DNA of 63,212 nt, the filler included, from Octopus bimaculoides (lineage: Eukaryota), in assembly GCF_001194135.2 (NCBI RefSeq). It is 3 parts of 3 records of this genome, joined end to end, with 100 filler letters (N's around TTAATTAATTAA, not from the genome) between each part and the next. Parts side by side here need not be neighbours in the genome. Positions count along the whole stretch, not along the records: positions 1 to 13,003 come from NC_068995.1; 2 more parts are not named here. One strand, written 5' to 3'. The translations under genes were made by a program, and so were the position numbers. The notes under the pieces were generated by a model. It was not told where the DNA came from. It saw only the letters and a program-made list of their open reading frames with translations, and did no database searches. Below are positions 1-12,054 of this stretch, in pieces. Position 1 is the first letter of the stretch. Each line of letters opens with the position of its first letter.

Positions 1-99
<99 letters not shown>

Positions 100-116
100 C
101 ATTATTATTATTATTA

Positions 117-202
<86 letters not shown>
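1..202. repeat. (TAT)n microsatellite
   Basis: Near-perfect trinucleotide tract. Confidence 0.98.
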
Positions 203-206
<4 letters not shown>

Positions 207-2986: not shown

Positions 2987-3521
2987 CAAACGAAAGGCAT
3001 TGTTTTGAAGGTCAGATGTTATACAATTTTGTCGTTTTGAAGAAATTGATTTTAGCTTCATTTTTTATCATGTTGTTATTATGCCAACCAACATCCTAAA
3101 AGTCTGTTCGTCGTAGAGAAGTTTTACTCTCAATTCGGTTAAATTTTTCCAAACTTTTTAATAGAGAATATAAATATGTTTATAAAAAAAACTAATATTA
3201 CTTCACAAATGCAATAGACATTTAAATTATCTAACATGCAACACAATAACCATTTTCCACTGCTACCTGTAAACAGAATAAATGAACATCAATTTGAAGA
3301 TCAAGAACAACAGCACCAACAAAAACCACACATTTGAAACATTAGTGAAAGCAATATCAACACTATCCTCACTAACCCCTACTAATGCGGATCGAAACAA
3401 TACCAACAACATTCAGAATGAAAACAACGGCTACAAAGATGTGTATGTAAAGAAGAAAAGTCTAAATTAACGACTAAACACACCTACAATTTCCACCTCC
3501 GCTGCCAGTACCACCATCTTA

Positions 3522-4623: not shown

Positions 4624-6530
4624 NNNNNNNNNNNNNNNNNNNNNNNNNNNNNNNNNNNNNNNNNNNNNNNNNNNNNNNNNNNNNNNNNNNNTATACATAT
4701 ATAAATTTATAGACAAACCCGAAGAATTTAAATTACGGAGAAGAGTGACACAAAGAGGTCCTTTTTCATGATAATGATAACTATATAGATAATAATAATA
4801 TATTCTCCATTTAGAGCGACTAAACCTAAACTACTGACTGAAGAAAGATCGGCCGAACCACTGAGAATTGAACACGACATCAATGTTTACATGGCTCCGA
4901 ACGCACTCAATTCATCACAAAACGACAATACTGATACGACATATTGTCGTTCGTTTTGTATTGAGTGTATTACATAACACTTTTACGTAAGTACATCATA
5001 GAAATGGCATTTCTTCTATAAAAGATTTGCTGTTTTAATCGATAAATGCCACGATTCAAGAATAAATATATAAAGTATAAAAACTGTGCCAAAAGCAAAT
5101 ATTGTAAGTGGAATCACTCTTAAACTACCTCCATTCGTACAAATACGCATAAATATTTGCGTGCAAAAATACAAACATGATACGTTCTTGCATATCTATC
5201 CCTGTATCTCTGTATCGACTACACTGTGCGGTGTTACAAAAATTATTTAACTAAATCCATTTTCCATCGTTTTGTAAGTCTTCCCAATGGCCTTTTCCGA
5301 AATCTTGGATAGCATTCGGAAATACTACGGTTCACCTGTTTGTGTGAATTTCTGACATGTCCTACAACTCGGAATATTTATGTATATACACAATGTAGCA
5401 ACTACATATCGGAATGATGTAATATTGTTTATTGAAATTACTTCATCTTACAAAAATTATGAGGCGCTCTTTATAATTCTTATAAGTTGAACTCGTAATG
5501 ACATCAGTTATTCTACCTTAATAATGACAACTTGAATTTATTCACAAATGAAAACAATCATTATGAATATTTTGATTTTGTTATATGGATTACACAAATC
5601 CCTTTGTGACAAATCCACTGAATATACCTGACCATCCACAGGAAATTGTTAATTAGTCACAACCGTGGCATATTCTTTTTTTAATTTAGAGTTTACGAAG
5701 TATTAGTAAACATTTGAATATAGTTAACTTATAATTCGATTTATACCACCCACGCGACAAAAACTATAAATCAGAATTTTTGAAATCAACTGGTTTTTCA
5801 TTTCTAAATATTCTACATTTCTAAATATTCTAAAACTTGACAAGTAAATATCACTTAGCGAAATGCTCTTTTTACTCATTTAACTTCAGTTTCCAATATT
5901 ACTTGTTTTGCATTTAAGGATTTGAGACATACAGAGTGAATTCATTTTAATGATTATTGAAGTACTTTTAAGTTGTACATTTTTTACATCGCGATTCACT
6001 ATTCTGTGAAAATGAAAATTATTTTATGATATACAAATGTGGTTCGCCAACAAAGACAAGAGAAAAAAATCATGATTTTATGTAAGCAACTCTTGGTCAT
6101 AATTTCTCTATAGAATAAACATCAAAATTACTGGCTTAGTATATGGGCACAAATTCTTTCAATTGCACTTGCAAATCAGTATTTCAGGCCTTTTCTCATG
6201 ATATTTTCCTTAACCAGAATTTTTAAAGAAATTATGCATTTATAAAATTTCAGATAGTCATTAAAACATTTCTCAAAAATAATTACTACAATTTCAGTAG
6301 AGTTTGGAGTAATTCGTGACAGTAAATATTTTGGGTATTGGGGACAAATTTGTTTAAAAAAGAATACAAACGCCGCTGGACAAGAAAAAGATGTAATAAT
6401 TTTTTGATATTTTTCTGCGTATCTGCGTATAAAAATACGTGTTTGACAACAATGTTTACTAATTCTTTTCTGTATATATTGTGCCTAAACACACACACAC
6501 ATATATATGTATATACATATATATACACAC

Positions 6531-6573
<43 letters not shown>

Positions 6574-6618
6574 GATATATATAGATATATGTATGTATGT
6601 ATAATTACATATGTCAGG

Positions 6619-7737
6619 TTAGTGGAAAAAGTTAATAATTACAAGAAGAAGAGTAGACCCGAACAAACAAAGTGTGATAAAAAGTGAGAGTCGGTTAAGT
6701 TGTGTGTAATTTAATGATATTTTTCCACATTTCCTTGGCTGAACATTTTCCTTGTATCGATTATCAGAGTTTTGATTCATATTCTTTTCCAGTACTGCGT
6801 GTTGATAGAGCCGACAGATAAAGATGGATCCAACGCAGGAAAGACTGCTGACTGTTGTCAGAAAAAGTATGTAGAGTAGATACAAAGGTATTCCTGACCC
6901 ATCCGTAGTTATCGCTCTCCCACTTTCAACAAGATAGAGAATATTGGTGAGAAAGAGTGTAGTTGAAAATGTAACTTTCTCCCCACTCTCTGCAGGCAAA
7001 AGAAATACGCACATCGTCAGTAATGATAGCAACAAAATCCCTATAATTATCGCAATATTATTCGCAGATGAAGACTGTTCTAACATGATTATTAATTCAA
7101 AACCGTCTGTCGAATTGTCGTCATCATATTTATGACCATCCAGTTGAATATTCCAAATGGTTGTCCATATATTCGATGTGTTAGCTAAATCTACATTTTG
7201 TAACTTCAAGTACGAGACCATTTCATTGGATAACCAAAAATATATTTTACATACATTGAGTGAAAAAGGATATTTGTAAAAGTCAATCGAGCAGTATGTA
7301 CGATAAATACTTCGAATAAAATAGGAGGTCCTTCCGTCATAGCTCACTGTAATATATTCACTTAAACTTGGAATTTTAGTAACTTTTTCTGCATTGCTCA
7401 CAAATATATTCGGTGCCCAAATGGAGTCAGAATTGAATTCTATATGAGTTAGATTGTCATATTTAATGGGATCCCAGCAAAGATATTCGTCTGTCCATCT
7501 AGACTCTATAATTACTTTACTATGTAACATTCCTTCAAACAAATCCAAATTGAATATAACGATTGATTTGAAATATAAATCAATATTTAGATTTTGGGTA
7601 ATATTTCGTACAGGACGAACATCTTTGTTGTAACCTTTCAGAAGAGTATCTCTTAAATCACGGTCAGTTAAATAAGAACTTGAAAATATATGCGGTATAT
7701 ATAAGAGAATGAGTATGCTGCTTCTGATATTCATCAT
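6619..7737 (-). CDS. Intronless divergent nicotinic-receptor-like pentameric ligand-gated ion channel subunit; probable cephalopod chemotactile receptor (CR) family member, 372 aa
   Basis: Stop-free ORF. First ATG is at 7737 (the track's 7740 start is GTG); TAA at 6619-6621. Hydrophobic signal peptide, then LLKGYNKDVRPV, WTDEYLCWDP and IWAPNIF motifs, Cys-loop CSIDFYKYPFSLNVC (7293-7249), M1-FLLPAESGEK-M2, IPL-M3, a ~38-aa M3-M4 loop and a terminal M4. No loop-C vicinal CC; loop-A Tyr and loop-B Trp positions are Ser. The specific paralogue cannot be named without a search. Confidence 0.93.
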   Translation of the reverse strand: MMNIRSSILILLYIPHIFSSSYLTDRDLRDTLLKGYNKDVRPVRNITQNLNIDLYFKSIVIFNLDLFEGMLHSKVIIESRWTDEYLCWDPIKYDNLTHIEFNSDSIWAPNIFVSNAEKVTKIPSLSEYITVSYDGRTSYFIRSIYRTYCSIDFYKYPFSLNVCKIYFWLSNEMVSYLKLQNVDLANTSNIWTTIWNIQLDGHKYDDDNSTDGFELIIMLEQSSSANNIAIIIGILLLSLLTMCVFLLPAESGEKVTFSTTLFLTNILYLVESGRAITTDGSGIPLYLLYILFLTTVSSLSCVGSIFICRLYQHAVLEKNMNQNSDNRYKENVQPRKCGKISLNYTQLNRLSLFITLCLFGSTLLLVIINFFH

Positions 7738-7757
7738 CACGTATGAAAAAAGAATAC

Positions 7758-7780
7758 CTGAAATGAAAATAACATTGTTT
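7758..7780 (-). promoter_or_regulatory. Putative 3' splice acceptor of a 5'-UTR intron of the CR-like gene
   Basis: Minus strand reads ...ttattttcatttCAG|Gtattcttttttcatacgtg ATG: a pyrimidine tract plus CAG/G, 20 nt upstream of the first ATG. Confidence 0.5.
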
Positions 7781-8119: not shown

Positions 8120-8730
8120 ACTAGTCAATGTACATCAGTAGCTCAGATGGAATATAATAGACACCACGACAATATAGCCAGGCTTGTCCATTAGACACTT
8201 TGCAACAAGTATAGACTTGACAGAGCAAAAAATTGGTACGGTTACAAACCTGAAGGCATCGTCGTAAATAAAAATGCAAAGATCCTATGGGAATTTATGA
8301 TTCAGTGCGACAATGAGATAGAGAATAGGAAGCCAGTCAAAGTCTTAATTGAAATAGAAAACAAACTATGCTGGATCGTAGATATAGCATGCCCAGCTGA
8401 TAATAAGGTATTCGATAAGAAAGAAAGAAAAGTCGAGAGATATGACAGGTTAGCTTGGGAGGTTAAGCAGTTTTGGTCGATGAAAAAGGTAGCAGTAGTA
8501 CCAATAATTGTCCGAGCCCTGAGAACAGTGAGAAAAATTTCGAGATGTACAGCAAATATGGGCTGCAATAAGGGTAGAGCACTTGCAGAAAAGAGCACTG
8601 CTTGGAATCACCCGAATACTCTGGAAGCTATTCGAAAGATAAGAGGTGTTACCTTAGTTTATTGGTAGTGAACAGCTGACACCGCAGTACATATCTAGCG
8701 TTAGAAGCTGTGCAGAAGCAATGGTAATAA
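8120..8730 (+). mobile_element. R4/Dong-clade LINE 3' fragment (restriction-like endonuclease domain) with (TAA)n tail
   Basis: RHDNIARLVH..LCNKY..WY..KPE..KILWEF.IQCD..I.NRKP..C.IVDIACP.D..K..K.ERY..LA.EVK..W..VVPIIV.AL, then a short 3'UTR and (TAA)n from ~8722. Confidence 0.85.
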
Positions 8731-8741
8731 TNNNNNNNNNN

Positions 8742-8828
<87 letters not shown>

Positions 8829-8861
8829 TAACAATAATAATAATAATAATAATAATAATAA

Positions 8862-9420: not shown

Positions 9421-10716
9421 CTTATAAAGAACATTTTTTTAAACTTAATTTCAACTACCTCAAAGAACCGTAACACAATTCATAGGTTTTGGTAGGCAAA
9501 ATAAATAGGAGTTGGAATAGTAAATTTAAGATTGTATATAACACTGCTACTTTGGGAATAAACAATGAATTTGGGCAAAAAAAAAAAAAAAATCTCTTAC
9601 AAGTATATGAAATACAAGCAGAAATTATAAAACGAAGACGCGCAATGATAACTTAATAGGAATACTTAAACTGGAAACAGAATTCTCAAATATCACAGAA
9701 CATTTATTACTAAAGATGTATTAAATATGAAACAGACAGATGGAGTCAAATAAATTACAAAATAAATTCAGAAATTAATACAGAAAACATTCAAATTAAG
9801 TAAAACTACAGAGCATATGATATTTATGAATGCGACATAGAGCGATTCTTAATGAGACTCTATCCAATAGACTAGCTGGAAGCCACTGCCTACCATTATG
9901 ATGAGCGCACATTTGCTTATTTATAAAATGAAATATAATTATGTACCGTAAATGAAACGGAAAAATTCACTTTATCGATTTTCTGTCTATGCCATGTGGT
10001 TCCCAACATGGGTAACGCGTACCTCTGCTGGTTCGCAAAGTTAGTACCGTGTGTCTGTAATCTACATTCAAATTTCGCCAACCCTTATATATATATATAT
10101 ATATNNNNNNNNNNNNNNNNNNNNNNNNNNNNNNNNNNNNNNNNNNNNNNNNNNNNNNNNNNNNNNNNNNNNNNNNNNNNNNNNNNNNNNNNNNNNNNNN
10201 NNNNNNNNNNNNNNNNNNNNNNNNNNNNNNNNNNNNNNNNNNNNNNNNNNNNNNNNNNNNNNNNNNNNNNNNNNNNNNNNNNNNNNNNNNNNNNNNNNNN
10301 NNNNNNNNNNNNNNNNNNNNNNNNNNNNNNNNNNNNNNNNNNNNNNNNNNNNNNNNNNNNNNNNNNNNNNNNNNNNNNNNNNNNNNNNNNNNNNNNNNNN
10401 NNNNNNNNNNNNNNNNNNNNNNNNNNNNNNNNNNNNNNNNNNNNNNNNNNNNNNNNNNNNNNNNNNNNNNNNNNNNNNNNNNNNNNNNNNNNNNNNNNNN
10501 NNNNNNNNNNNNNNNNNNNNNNNNNNNNNNNNNNNNNNNNNNNNNNNNNNNNNNNNNNNNNNNNNNNNNNNNNNNNNNNNNNNNNNNNNNNNNNNNNNNN
10601 NNNNNNNNNNNNNNNNNNNNNNNNNNNNNNNNNNNNNNNNNNNNNNNNNNNNNNNNNNNNNNNNNNNNNNNNNNNNNNNNNNNNNNNNNNNNNNNNNNNN
10701 NNNNNNNNNNNNNNNN

Positions 10717-11589: not shown

Positions 11590-11958
11590 AATATACTCNN
11601 NNNNNNNNNNNNNNNNNNNNNNNNNNNNNNNNNNNNNNNNNNNNNNNNNNNNNNNNNNNNNNNNNNNNNNNNNNNNNNNNNNNNNNNNNNNNNNNNNNNN
11701 NNNNNNNNNNNNNNNNNNNNNNNNNNNNNNNNNNNNNNNNNNNNNNNNNNNNNNNNNNNNNNNNNNNNNNNNNNNNNNNNNNNNNNNNNNNNNNNNNNNN
11801 NNNNNNNNNNNNNNNNNNNNNNNNNNNNNNNNNNNNNNNNNNNNNNNNNNNNNNNNNNNNNNNNNNNNNNNNNNNNNNNNNNNNNNNNNNNNNNNNNNNN
11901 NNNNNNNNNNNNNNNNNNNNNNNNNNNNNNNNNNNNNNNNNNNNNNNNNNNNNNNNNN

Positions 11959-12054
<96 letters not shown>

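What the first reader, a model, noticed from the sequence alone, without database searches (positions are those of the whole stretch)
6619..7737. Intronless nAChR-derived receptor with the acetylcholine site dismantled: candidate chemotactile (taste-by-touch) receptor
Seen: an intact 372-aa pentameric-channel subunit in one coding exon. Loop A WxPDIxLYN reads WAPNIFVSN (Tyr to Ser), the loop-B Trp position reads Ser (CKIYFWLS vs CKLKFGSW), loop C is about 6 residues shorter than alpha7 with no vicinal CC (WNIQLDGHKYDDDNSTDGF), and the M3-M4 loop is only ~38 aa. Known: octopus and cuttlefish CRs are intronless, clustered, ACh-insensitive nAChR derivatives expressed in sucker sensory cells that detect poorly soluble compounds. 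Inference: this is a CR paralogue, possibly one with no assigned ligand; the acidic DDD loop C suggests a different pocket chemistry.
Basis: partly seen in the sequence, partly recalled or inferred. Interest (0 to 1): 0.8.

Follow-up and report, generated by a model that had tools for sequence, protein, structure and literature searches.

The report
Octopus chemotactile receptor gene, uncharacterised paralogue
This is an intact gene from the California two-spot octopus for one subunit of the known "taste-by-touch" receptor family, which derives from acetylcholine receptors; it is ordinary for that family, although the current public gene model truncates it.

Summary
Window 6619-7737 (minus strand) holds one uninterrupted 372-codon frame (371 from the conserved ATG at 7734). 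It encodes a complete pentameric ligand-gated channel subunit. The window is Octopus bimaculoides chromosome CM046615.1.

Three tests place the protein in the cephalopod chemotactile receptor (CR) family rather than among canonical nAChRs:
- HMMER against PDB: CRT1 156 bits, squid CRB1 104, alpha7 95.
- Foldseek: best match is CRT1 8eis (TM 0.88).
- NJ trees: a 20-member clade containing CRT1 and CRB1, bootstrap 0.79 and 0.87.

None of the aligned aromatic-box positions is aromatic (S114, S170, T210, I76; alpha7 Tyr188 falls in the loop-C deletion). Loop C is 6 residues shorter than in alpha7 and has no Cys-Cys. The cation-pore motifs are kept. Intact, indel-free 371-codon orthologues exist in O. 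sinensis and a third octopod, with dN/dS 0.28-0.47, so the gene is functional.

- The coding sequence is one exon, but a conserved acceptor 17 nt upstream of the first ATG indicates a 5'-UTR intron.
- Only "DDNSTDGF" of loop C is conserved.
- The pocket chemistry lies within the family's normal range.

RefSeq XP_014771421.2 truncates the gene. The full-length protein is already in UniRef. Expression and ligand were not testable. Low novelty.

The parts
6619..7737 (-). Complete coding sequence of the CR-family subunit. It is 372 codons from the first ATG (7737). The ATG conserved in orthologues is at 7734-7732, giving 371 aa. The stop codon TAA is at 6621-6619. The coding sequence is a single exon.
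7678..7737 (-). Predicted signal peptide, about aa 1-20 (MMNIRSSILILLYIPHIFSS). The solved mature CRT1 chain 8eis starts its alignment at query residue 21.
   Evidence: 8eis residue 3 aligns to query 21; helix 3-16. The cleavage site is inferred.
7063..7677 (-). Extracellular ligand-binding domain, aa 21-225: N-terminal helix plus beta-sandwich. N-glycosylation sequons at N45, N95, N186 and N208.
7393..7419 (-). Loop A, WAPNIFVSN (aa 107-115). alpha7 Tyr93 aligns to Ser114. The same column holds Cys96 in CRT1.
7249..7293 (-). Cys-loop, Cys149 to Cys163 (CSIDFYKYPFSLNVC). Both cysteines are conserved in all three orthologues.
7219..7251 (-). beta7 / loop B, CKIYFWLSNEM (aa 163-173). The alpha7 Trp149 column holds Ser170. 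Trp168 occupies the column of CRT1 Cys150.
7099..7155 (-). Loop C, WNIQLDGHKYDDDNSTDGF (aa 195-213). It is 6 residues shorter than in alpha7 and has no vicinal Cys-Cys. DDNSTDGF, with sequon N208-S-T, is conserved in three species.
6805..7062 (-). Transmembrane helices M1-M3 (aa 226-311). This is the most constrained part of the gene (dN/dS 0.11-0.17 against the distant orthologue).
6916..6981 (-). Pore-lining M2, E253(-1') to R274(20'): EKVTFSTTLFLTNILYLVESGR. It keeps the SGEK motif, the -1' Glu and the 9' Leu, as in CRT1, CRB1 and alpha7.
6691..6804 (-). Short M3-M4 intracellular segment, about 38 aa (aa 312-349). It is the least constrained region (dN/dS about 0.5-0.6).
6622..6690 (-). M4 helix and C-terminus (aa 350-372).
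7741..7757 (-). 5' leader of the coding exon, between the splice acceptor and the GTG/ATG cluster.
7758..7775 (-). Conserved 3' splice site (polypyrimidine tract plus AG, 'ttattttcatttcag'). It marks an intron in the 5' leader. The RefSeq exon 1 lies about 18 kb upstream, outside the window.
7007..7012 (-). Cryptic donor GTGCGT inside the M1 codons, used by RefSeq model XP_014771421.2 to leave the ORF. The GT is absent at this site in O. sinensis (ATGCAT).
3096..3153 (-). Terminal coding exon of the RefSeq model (…LEKFNRIESKTSLRRTDF*). It has a weak acceptor and is probably not part of the functional mRNA.

Best explanation
The locus is a functional, single-coding-exon gene of Octopus bimaculoides for a subunit of the chemotactile receptor (CR) family. 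This family is the cephalopod-specific offshoot of nicotinic receptors.

Proposed mechanism:
- The protein is made with a signal peptide and assembles into a pentamer, either alone or with other CR subunits. The pentamer forms a cation channel.
- The acetylcholine site no longer exists. None of the aligned aromatic-box positions is aromatic, and loop C is shortened and has lost its Cys-Cys.
- Gating would therefore come from some other small molecule bound in the remodelled pocket at the subunit interface. Binding would open a pore that keeps the -1' Glu ring and the 9' Leu gate, and cation entry would depolarise the sensory cell.

What is shown here: gene integrity, family membership, loss of the ACh-site residues, retention of the pore motifs, and purifying selection.

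What is inferred from the family's published biology: pentamer assembly, ACh-insensitivity, ligand class, and expression in sucker sensory cells.
For: - Intact ORF, far beyond chance.
- pLGIC domains.
- Best PDB sequence hits are CRT1 (1.1e-44, 156 bits) and CRB1 (104 bits), ahead of alpha7 (95 bits).
- The AF2 model is confident (pLDDT 88.4, pTM 0.78) and shows the N-helix, beta-sandwich and four TM helices. Its best Foldseek match is CRT1 8eis_A (TM 0.88, rmsd 2.7 A).
- NJ phylogeny: the query and its orthologue lie in a 20-member clade with CRT1 and CRB1, bootstrap 0.785 (163 sequences) and 0.87 (75 sequences, L-INS-i).
- In that clade 0 of 20 members have the loop-C Cys-Cys or the loop-B Trp. 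Outside it 85 of 143 have the Trp.
- Pore motif SGEK and 9' Leu are conserved.
- Orthologues in O. sinensis (88% identity) and a third octopod (81%) are exactly 371 codons with no indel or stop. dN/dS is 0.28-0.47 overall and 0.11-0.17 in M1-M3.
- Other single-exon CR-clade genes lie on the same chromosome, 200-290 kb away. In O. sinensis one lies about 37 kb from the orthologue.
- Published family properties (ACh-insensitive, hydrophobic ligands, sucker expression, intronless, 26 genes in O. bimaculoides): PMC11526382, bioRxiv 10.1101/2025.03.03.641191, 10.1101/2025.10.28.685082, PMC13174522.
Against: - No expression evidence was obtainable. Neither the 372-aa nor the 371-aa product is on record on any assembled contig. 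The 90% cluster holds only database gene models.
- The gene's position inside the CR clade is unresolved (sub-clade bootstraps 0.19-0.43), and it sits on a long branch with at most about 33% identity to any paralogue.
- Trees are NJ only. No ML or Bayesian program was available.
- The pocket is more polar than the hydrophobic CRT1 pocket: K57, R142, N171, T187, S209, T210. It also lacks the clade-typical Cys pair.
- RefSeq predicts a truncated 286-aa product, so some aberrant or alternative splicing may have RNA support that I cannot see.
- I could not check whether this gene is one of the 26 published CRs.
Confidence: 0.78

Rival explanations
1. It is a canonical acetylcholine-gated nicotinic receptor subunit, as its RefSeq name ('acetylcholine receptor subunit beta-type unc-29') implies. 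For example, it could be a non-alpha structural subunit of a neuronal or muscle receptor.
For: The automated name comes from NCBI. Non-alpha subunits of real nAChRs also lack the vicinal Cys-Cys. The fold and pore motifs are shared with nAChRs.
Against: - Both the principal-face and complementary-face aromatic positions are lost, including the loop-D Trp (Ile76), which canonical complementary subunits keep.
- It scores 60 bits higher to CRT1 than to any nAChR.
- It sits in the CR clade.
- The single-exon CDS and the 38-aa M3-M4 loop are typical of CRs, not of canonical subunits, which are 450-600 aa.
Confidence: 0.04
2. It is a decaying or non-functional copy (a retrocopy or unitary pseudogene) whose open frame survives by chance or youth.
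For: - The CDS is intronless, which is a hallmark of retroposition (PMC11526382).
- No transcript contig was found.
- RefSeq could not build a full-length model.
- dN/dS between the two closest species is fairly high, at 0.47.
Against: - The frame is intact, indel-free and 371 codons long in three species separated by dS up to 0.38. dN/dS is well below 1, and 0.11-0.17 in the channel helices.
- The splice acceptor in the leader is conserved.
- The Cys-loop and pore motifs are conserved.
Confidence: 0.05
3. It is a CR-family subunit that does not sense ligands itself. Instead it serves as an accessory or structural partner in heteromeric CR channels, tuning conductance or trafficking.
For: - CR subunits are reported to combine into heteromeric complexes (bioRxiv 10.1101/2025.03.03.641191).
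- This lineage has 1:1:1 orthologues without indels.
- It lacks the clade-specific Cys96/Cys150 pair.
- It has a polar pocket with a glycosylation sequon on loop C.
- It has no acidic residue at the CRT1 E104 vestibule position (K121 or I122).
Against: - Its conservation is not exceptional. Another CR orthologue pair between O. bimaculoides and O. sinensis is at least 90% identical, against 88% here.
- The ECD dN/dS of 0.24-0.47 is typical of chemoreceptors and not co-receptor-like.
- Pocket polarity lies within the family range.
Confidence: 0.1
4. The true product is the RefSeq 286-aa protein: the extracellular domain plus part of M1 and a short alternative tail. This would be a truncated, non-channel binding protein.
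For: The current RefSeq model XP_014771421.2 has this structure. O. sinensis RefSeq also truncates its orthologue to 177 aa.
Against: - The two species' models leave the ORF at different sites.
- The O. bimaculoides donor GT is absent in O. sinensis.
- The upstream 'coding' exons of the two models are unrelated in sequence.
- The discarded M1-M4 part is under the strongest purifying selection.
- The 3' exon has a weak acceptor.
Confidence: 0.03

Closest known systems
Octopus bimaculoides chemotactile receptor CRT1 (CR518; PDB 8EIS, 9E6B-D)
   Same: - Same species and same clade.
- Same fold (TM 0.88).
- Single-exon CDS and a size of about 370-400 aa, with a short M3-M4 loop.
- No loop-C Cys-Cys and no loop-B Trp.
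- Identical pore signature (PxESGEKV…L9'), and the Cys-loop is kept.
   Different: - Only about 29-30% identity.
- The CRT1 ligand-contact residues Y39, Y58, W122, F124, L153, S169, L191 and F192 correspond here to K57, I76, F140, R142, N171, T187, S209 and T210. That is 1 aromatic and 2 charged residues, against 5 aromatic and 0 charged in CRT1.
- The CRT1 vestibule residue E104, which tunes Ca2+ permeation, is K121 or I122 here.
- The CRT1 Cys96/Cys150 pair is Ser114/Trp168 here.
Squid chemotactile receptor CRB1 (PDB 8EIZ)
   Same: Member of the same 20-sequence clade. It also lacks the ACh-site residues and the Cys96/Cys150 pair (Tyr/Tyr).
   Different: It is more distant (104 bits). It comes from a decapod lineage and is a bitter-tastant receptor (PMC10338036, PMC11526382). 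The present gene has orthologues only in octopods among the data searched.
Human alpha7 nicotinic acetylcholine receptor
   Same: pLGIC fold, Cys-loop, cation-selective GEK motif, 9' Leu gate, and capacity to form homopentamers.
   Different: - alpha7 Y93, W149, Y195 and W55 align to S114, S170, T210 and I76. Y188 and C190-C191 fall in the 6-residue loop-C deletion.
- The alpha7 gene has many introns and the protein has a long M3-M4 loop; the chain is 502 aa, against 371 here.
Alpo4-type and other 'CR-like' divergent molluscan/annelid nAChR-like subunits
   Same: They are lophotrochozoan nAChR-like subunits that have lost the ACh signature motifs and have unknown agonists (PMC10338036, PMC13174522).
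   Different: They fall outside the clade that contains CRT1, CRB1 and this gene. The Alvinella receptor 8bx5 scores only 80 bits.

Membership tests
Cephalopod chemotactile receptors (CRs) | Phylogenetic position inside the cephalopod clade that contains the functionally proven CRs (octopus CRT1, squid CRB1), apart from canonical nAChRs | tested here: met
   NJ bootstrap is 0.785 (163 domains) and 0.87 (75 domains, L-INS-i, 500 replicates) for a 20-member clade with CRT1 and CRB1. HMMER gives 156 bits to CRT1 against 95 to alpha7. Placement within the clade is unresolved, and no ML tree was possible.
Cephalopod chemotactile receptors (CRs) | Loss of the acetylcholine-coordinating residues (aromatic box, loop-C vicinal cysteines) | tested here: met
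   Y93 to S114, W149 to S170, Y195 to T210, W55 to I76. Y188 and the Cys-Cys are deleted with 6 loop-C residues. Pairwise HMMER offers an alternative loop-B alignment with W168.
Cephalopod chemotactile receptors (CRs) | Intronless gene structure | tested here: met
   The whole CDS is one exon in three species. One caveat applies: a conserved acceptor 17 nt upstream of the first ATG, together with RefSeq 5' exons, indicates an intron in the 5' UTR.
Cephalopod chemotactile receptors (CRs) | Genomic clustering with other CR genes | tested here: inconclusive
   No second pLGIC gene lies within 28 kb upstream or 13 kb downstream. CR-clade genes P0011 and P0017 lie about 200 and 290 kb away on the same chromosome. 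In O. sinensis, P0003 lies about 37 kb from the orthologue. This is a loose cluster, not a tandem array.
Cephalopod chemotactile receptors (CRs) | Hydrophobic orthosteric pocket suited to poorly soluble ligands | tested here: inconclusive
   By alignment, the 8 CRT1 contact positions have a mean Kyte-Doolittle value of -0.85 here, against +1.11 in CRT1. The clade ranges from -2.3 to +1.1 (CRB1 is -1.84), so the measure does not discriminate. No pentamer model or coordinates were available.
Cephalopod chemotactile receptors (CRs) | Expression in sucker sensory epithelium | not testable with these tools
   No RNA-seq mapping tool was available. Exact-product look-ups found no contig.
Cephalopod chemotactile receptors (CRs) | Insensitive to acetylcholine; gated by terpenoids, bitter compounds, steroids or microbial metabolites | not testable with these tools
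   This needs electrophysiology. It is a family property described in PMC11526382, bioRxiv 10.1101/2025.03.03.641191 and 10.1101/2025.10.28.685082.
Cephalopod chemotactile receptors (CRs) | Listed among the 26 CR genes published for O. bimaculoides | not tested
   The primary papers (PMC7605239, PMC10228259, PMC10262778) are not held. No held paper mentions XP_014771421.
Pentameric ligand-gated ion channels (Cys-loop superfamily), cation-selective branch | ECD beta-sandwich with a 13-residue-spaced Cys-loop, four TM helices, M2 with -1' Glu (GEK) and 9' Leu | tested here: met
   Pfam domains; C149-x13-C163; AF2 secondary structure; M2 alignment.
Canonical nicotinic acetylcholine receptor subunit (as named by RefSeq) | Conserved ACh-binding residues on the principal face (Tyr A, Trp B, Tyr-Cys-Cys-Tyr C) or the complementary face (Trp D) | tested here: not met
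   None of these positions is conserved. The gene lies outside the groups that carry the loop-B Trp.

The most novel reading that the evidence does not exclude
This is an old, single-copy, octopod-wide CR lineage that differs structurally from most CRs. It lacks the CR-specific loop A-beta7 cysteine pair (Ser114/Trp168 instead). It has a polar, partly charged pocket with a conserved acidic, glycosylated loop C (DDNSTDGF). It has no acidic vestibule residue at the CRT1 E104 position. It could therefore detect a different ligand class, polar or cationic rather than greasy. Alternatively it could act as a shared accessory subunit that sets the conductance of heteromeric CR channels.
Probability: 0.12. 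Interest if true: 0.5.

Novelty: already known. Interest (0 to 1): 0.25.

Why it matters
This matters little beyond annotation. The CR family, its nAChR origin, its intronless genes and its role in octopus 'taste by touch' were described from this very genome. The full-length protein has been in UniRef and EukProt since the first annotation.

Useful by-products:
1. The current RefSeq models in two species (XP_014771421.2 and XP_036366081.1) truncate a gene that is intact and under selection. Anyone counting or cloning CRs from RefSeq would miss its channel domain.
2. The gene has a 5'-UTR intron, which qualifies the 'intronless' label.
3. A perfectly covarying, clade-specific cysteine pair separates most CRs from a minority that includes this gene and squid CRB1. 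It may be a handy structural marker.

If the gene turned out not to be among the 26 listed CRs, it would be one more orphan receptor to screen.

Tried and rejected
- Primary CR papers. I tried to read van Giesen 2020, Allard 2023, Kang 2023, the Curr Biol primer and Albertin 2015, by DOI and by PMC id. None is held, so the list of 26 CR genes could not be checked.
- Naming guess. I guessed that CR names follow accession digits ('CR421'). There is no such name in the literature. A search for CR518/CR840 found only the paper already read. A search for XP_014771421 gave 0 papers.
- Supplements of two relevant preprints are not held.
- Exact-product look-ups, to find transcript contigs and so tissue evidence. 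Neither the 372-aa nor the 371-aa product is on record.
- The third species (Logan runs SRR11869384-94) could not be identified. The literature search hit an unrelated paper.
- Pocket hydrophobicity as a discriminator. I rejected it because the contact positions vary across the whole clade.
- Co-receptor idea based on unusual conservation. It is not supported, because another CR orthologue pair is at least as conserved.
- Rest of the window. There are no Rfam families and no Pfam domains in the other ORFs. It holds only microsatellites and assembly gaps.
- The first MAFFT L-INS-i run on 163 sequences timed out. It was replaced by --auto on the full set and L-INS-i on a reduced set.
Full report
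**1. Observation**

The window is Octopus bimaculoides. It matches, at 100%, the reverse complement of chromosome CM046615.1 (GCA_001194135.2) around 38.24-38.26 Mb.

On the minus strand, the ORF listing finds one long open frame, 6619..7740, from a GTG. The window is AT-rich, with a stop probability of 0.075 per codon. Under that composition such a frame has a probability of about 6e-9 for the whole window. Every other long 'ORF' is a microsatellite, an N-run or under 135 aa.

Pfam finds the ligand-binding domain (7.9e-30) and the transmembrane domain (3.9e-6, a hair below the curated cut-off) of neurotransmitter-gated channels.

The claims check out as follows:
- Loop A Tyr to Ser114 holds in both HMMER and MAFFT alignments.
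- Loop C has no Cys-Cys and is 6 residues shorter than in alpha7.
- The M3-M4 segment is about 38 residues.

The loop-B claim depends on gap placement. The 163-sequence alignment puts Ser170 in the alpha7 Trp149 column. Pairwise HMMER instead matches Trp168 through a 2-residue gap.

**2. What it is**

Against all PDB sequences the best hits are octopus 'Chemotactile receptor CRT1' (9E6B/8EIS, 1.1e-44, 156 bits) and squid CRB1 (104 bits). Human alpha7 and 5-HT3A follow at about 95 bits.

An exhaustive HMMER scan of 1.84 billion representatives found 1,984 relatives at E<=1e-10. Apart from orthologues, none is more than about 33% identical.

I split the top 150 hits into single domains, because many are fused gene models of 600-1,469 aa. 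I added the CRT1, CRB1 and alpha7 segments printed by the PDB search and built neighbour-joining trees.
- The query and its orthologue (bootstrap 1.0) fall in a 20-member clade with CRT1 and CRB1.
- That clade has bootstrap 0.785 with 163 sequences and 0.87 with a 75-sequence L-INS-i alignment and 500 replicates.
- The clade members that could be named are Octopus bimaculoides, O. sinensis and O. vulgaris proteins.
- Placement inside the clade is unresolved (0.19-0.43).

An AlphaFold2 model built on a 63-sequence alignment is confident (pLDDT 88.4, pTM 0.78). It shows the canonical N-terminal helix, beta-sandwich and four TM helices. Its best Foldseek match in the PDB is CRT1 8eis_A (E 3e-27, target TM-score 0.88, rmsd 2.7 A), ahead of muscle, alpha7 and alpha4beta2 receptors.

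**3. Is it a live gene?**

O. sinensis carries an intact, gap-free orthologous frame (88% identity). Five Logan runs of an unidentified, more distant octopod each yielded a contig carrying the same orthologue (81% identity). The contigs are identical where they overlap.

All three orthologues are exactly 371 codons with no indel. Nei-Gojobori estimates are:
- dN/dS 0.47 between O. bimaculoides and O. sinensis (dS 0.12).
- dN/dS 0.28 against the distant species (dS 0.35-0.38).
- Against the distant species, by region: 0.11-0.17 in M1-M3, 0.24-0.26 in the extracellular domain, and 0.56-0.62 in the M3-M4 loop plus M4.

This is the pattern of a working channel with a fast-evolving ligand domain. 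It is not the pattern of a pseudogene.

**4. Gene structure and annotation**

The start codon shared by the orthologues is the second ATG (window 7734).

Seventeen bases upstream of the first ATG lies a good 3' splice site (…ttttcatttcag|g, exon start 7757). It is conserved in all three species.

RefSeq joins it to an exon 18 kb upstream that has a consensus donor (AAG|GTACGT). The 'coding' extensions that RefSeq derives from the upstream exons in O. bimaculoides and O. sinensis are unrelated to each other. These exons are therefore most likely 5' UTR. The CDS is intronless, but the gene probably is not.

The current RefSeq protein XP_014771421.2 (286 aa, 'acetylcholine receptor subunit beta-type unc-29') leaves the frame at a cryptic donor in M1 (window 7012). 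It ends in a small exon at about 3096-3153. The O. sinensis model XP_036366081.1 leaves at a different site. The O. bimaculoides donor GT is not even present in O. sinensis. Both truncations discard the most constrained part of the gene, so I regard them as annotation errors.

The correct 371-aa protein is nevertheless already in UniRef, EukProt and MetaClust (P0155).

**5. Context**

No other pLGIC gene lies within 28 kb upstream or 13 kb downstream. Two CR-clade, single-exon genes lie about 200 kb and about 290 kb away on the same chromosome: P0011, the closest relative of CRT1 in the tree, and P0017. In O. sinensis a CR-clade gene lies about 37 kb from the orthologue, with another pLGIC gene 9 kb beyond it. 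This is a loose cluster, not a tandem array.

The rest of the window holds microsatellites, five assembly gaps, no Rfam family, and no further recognisable protein domain.

**6. Mechanism**

Shown here:
- A signal-peptide-like N-terminus.
- The Cys-loop (C149-C163).
- A pore helix with SGEK (-1' Glu), 2'/6' Thr and 9' Leu. The -1' Glu, 6' Thr and 9' Leu positions match CRT1, CRB1 and alpha7; the 2' position is Thr here and in CRB1 but Ser in CRT1 and alpha7.
- No aromatic residue at any aligned position of the ACh aromatic box.

Inferred: the subunit forms homo- or heteropentameric cation channels that ACh cannot gate. Another ligand would open them by binding in the remodelled interface pocket, as published for CRT1 and CRB1 (PMC11526382; bioRxiv 10.1101/2025.03.03.641191; 10.1101/2025.10.28.685082).

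Mapping the published CRT1 contact residues (8EIS numbering, verified against the printed sequence) gives the following:

| CRT1 | This protein |
|---|---|
| Y39 | K57 |
| Y58 | I76 |
| W122 | F140 |
| F124 | R142 |
| L153 | N171 |
| S169 | T187 |
| L191 | S209 |
| F192 | T210 |

This pocket is more polar than CRT1's. However, these positions vary just as wildly across the whole clade, and CRB1 is more polar still.

Of the 'DDD', only DD is conserved. The conserved block is DDNSTDGF, with an N-glycosylation sequon at N208.

The CRT1 vestibule residue E104, reported to set Ca2+ permeation, aligns to K121 (HMMER) or I122 (MAFFT). Ca2+ permeability may therefore differ. That is inference on a variable loop.

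**7. Comparison and novelty**

The gene meets the testable defining features of the CR family: clade, loss of the ACh site, intronless CDS, cation pore and short intracellular loop. It fails the defining feature of canonical nAChR subunits.

Clustering and pocket hydrophobicity are inconclusive. Expression and pharmacology are untestable here.

The family was described genome-wide from this species ('up to 26 CRs', PMC11526382). The protein has been public since the first annotation. I therefore rate the finding as already known in kind and, very probably, in instance.

I could not read the primary papers to confirm that this gene is on the list, and no held paper names it. If it is not listed, it would be a new member of a known kind.

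**8. Verdict**

Family membership has high confidence. Sensory function is inferred from the family. Novelty is low, and I score interest at 0.25.

Noticed in passing
window 6619-7757 (-), 3096-3153 (-); L006 10001-10058; L007 10001-20959: The current RefSeq models of this gene in two species are truncated chimeras: O. bimaculoides XP_014771421.2 (286 aa) and O. sinensis XP_036366081.1 (177 aa). Each has an unrelated upstream 'coding' exon, part of the ORF, and an exit at a different cryptic donor. The genomic ORF is intact in both species.
   Followed up: yes
window 7396-7398 (Ser114) and 7234-7236 (Trp168); alignment columns of CRT1 Cys96 and Cys150: A cysteine pair (loop A 'xCN' and Cys-loop Cys+5 on beta7) covaries perfectly. 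In the CR clade, 13 of 20 members have both and 7 of 20 have neither. Outside the clade, 0 of 143 have both. It is probably a CR-specific extra disulfide. This gene (Ser/Trp), squid CRB1 (Tyr/Tyr) and a few others lack it. No coordinates or literature statement were available to confirm a bond.
   Followed up: partly
window 7114-7116 (Asn208), loop C: An N-glycosylation sequon, N-S-T, sits at the tip of loop C inside the block DDNSTDGF. The block is conserved in all three octopod orthologues. A glycan there could partly cap the orthosteric pocket.
   Followed up: partly
window 8297-8668 (+): A 123-aa ORF (MIQCDNEIENRKPVKVLIEIENKLCWIVDIACPADNKVFDKKERKVERYDRLAWEVKQFW…) lies about 560 bp upstream of the receptor ORF, on the opposite strand, inside the presumed 5'-UTR intron. 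It has no Pfam hit. From memory it resembles the C-terminal tail of retroelement ORFs common in invertebrate genomes. This was not verified.
   Followed up: partly
window 1-203, 2728-2983, 6501-6603, 8742-8861, 11978-12054; N-runs at 2832-2841, 4624-4691, 8732-8741, 10105-10716, 11599-11958: The window has dense tri- and dinucleotide microsatellites: (TAT)n, (TTC)n, (ATT)n, (AT)n, (TAA)n and (AGAG)n. The (AT)n run starts about 16 bp after the stop codon. There are five assembly gaps, several of them flanked by these repeats. They generate the long spurious 'ORFs' in the ORF list.
   Followed up: yes
representative-library hits P0007, P0008, P0010, P0022, P0028, P0063 and others: Many of the closest database relatives are proteins of 600-1,469 aa containing 2-4 (in one case, by the library's own stretch count, up to 6) consecutive pLGIC domains. 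They are almost certainly neighbouring intronless genes fused by gene predictors. This would distort family counts.
   Followed up: partly
L001-L005 (Logan SRR11869384, -385, -390, -391, -394): Five runs each gave a contig, identical where they overlap. The contigs are genomic in type and collinear with the window through the splice acceptor and the 3' flank. They carry the 81%-identical orthologue from an octopod more distant than O. sinensis. The species could not be identified.
   Followed up: partly
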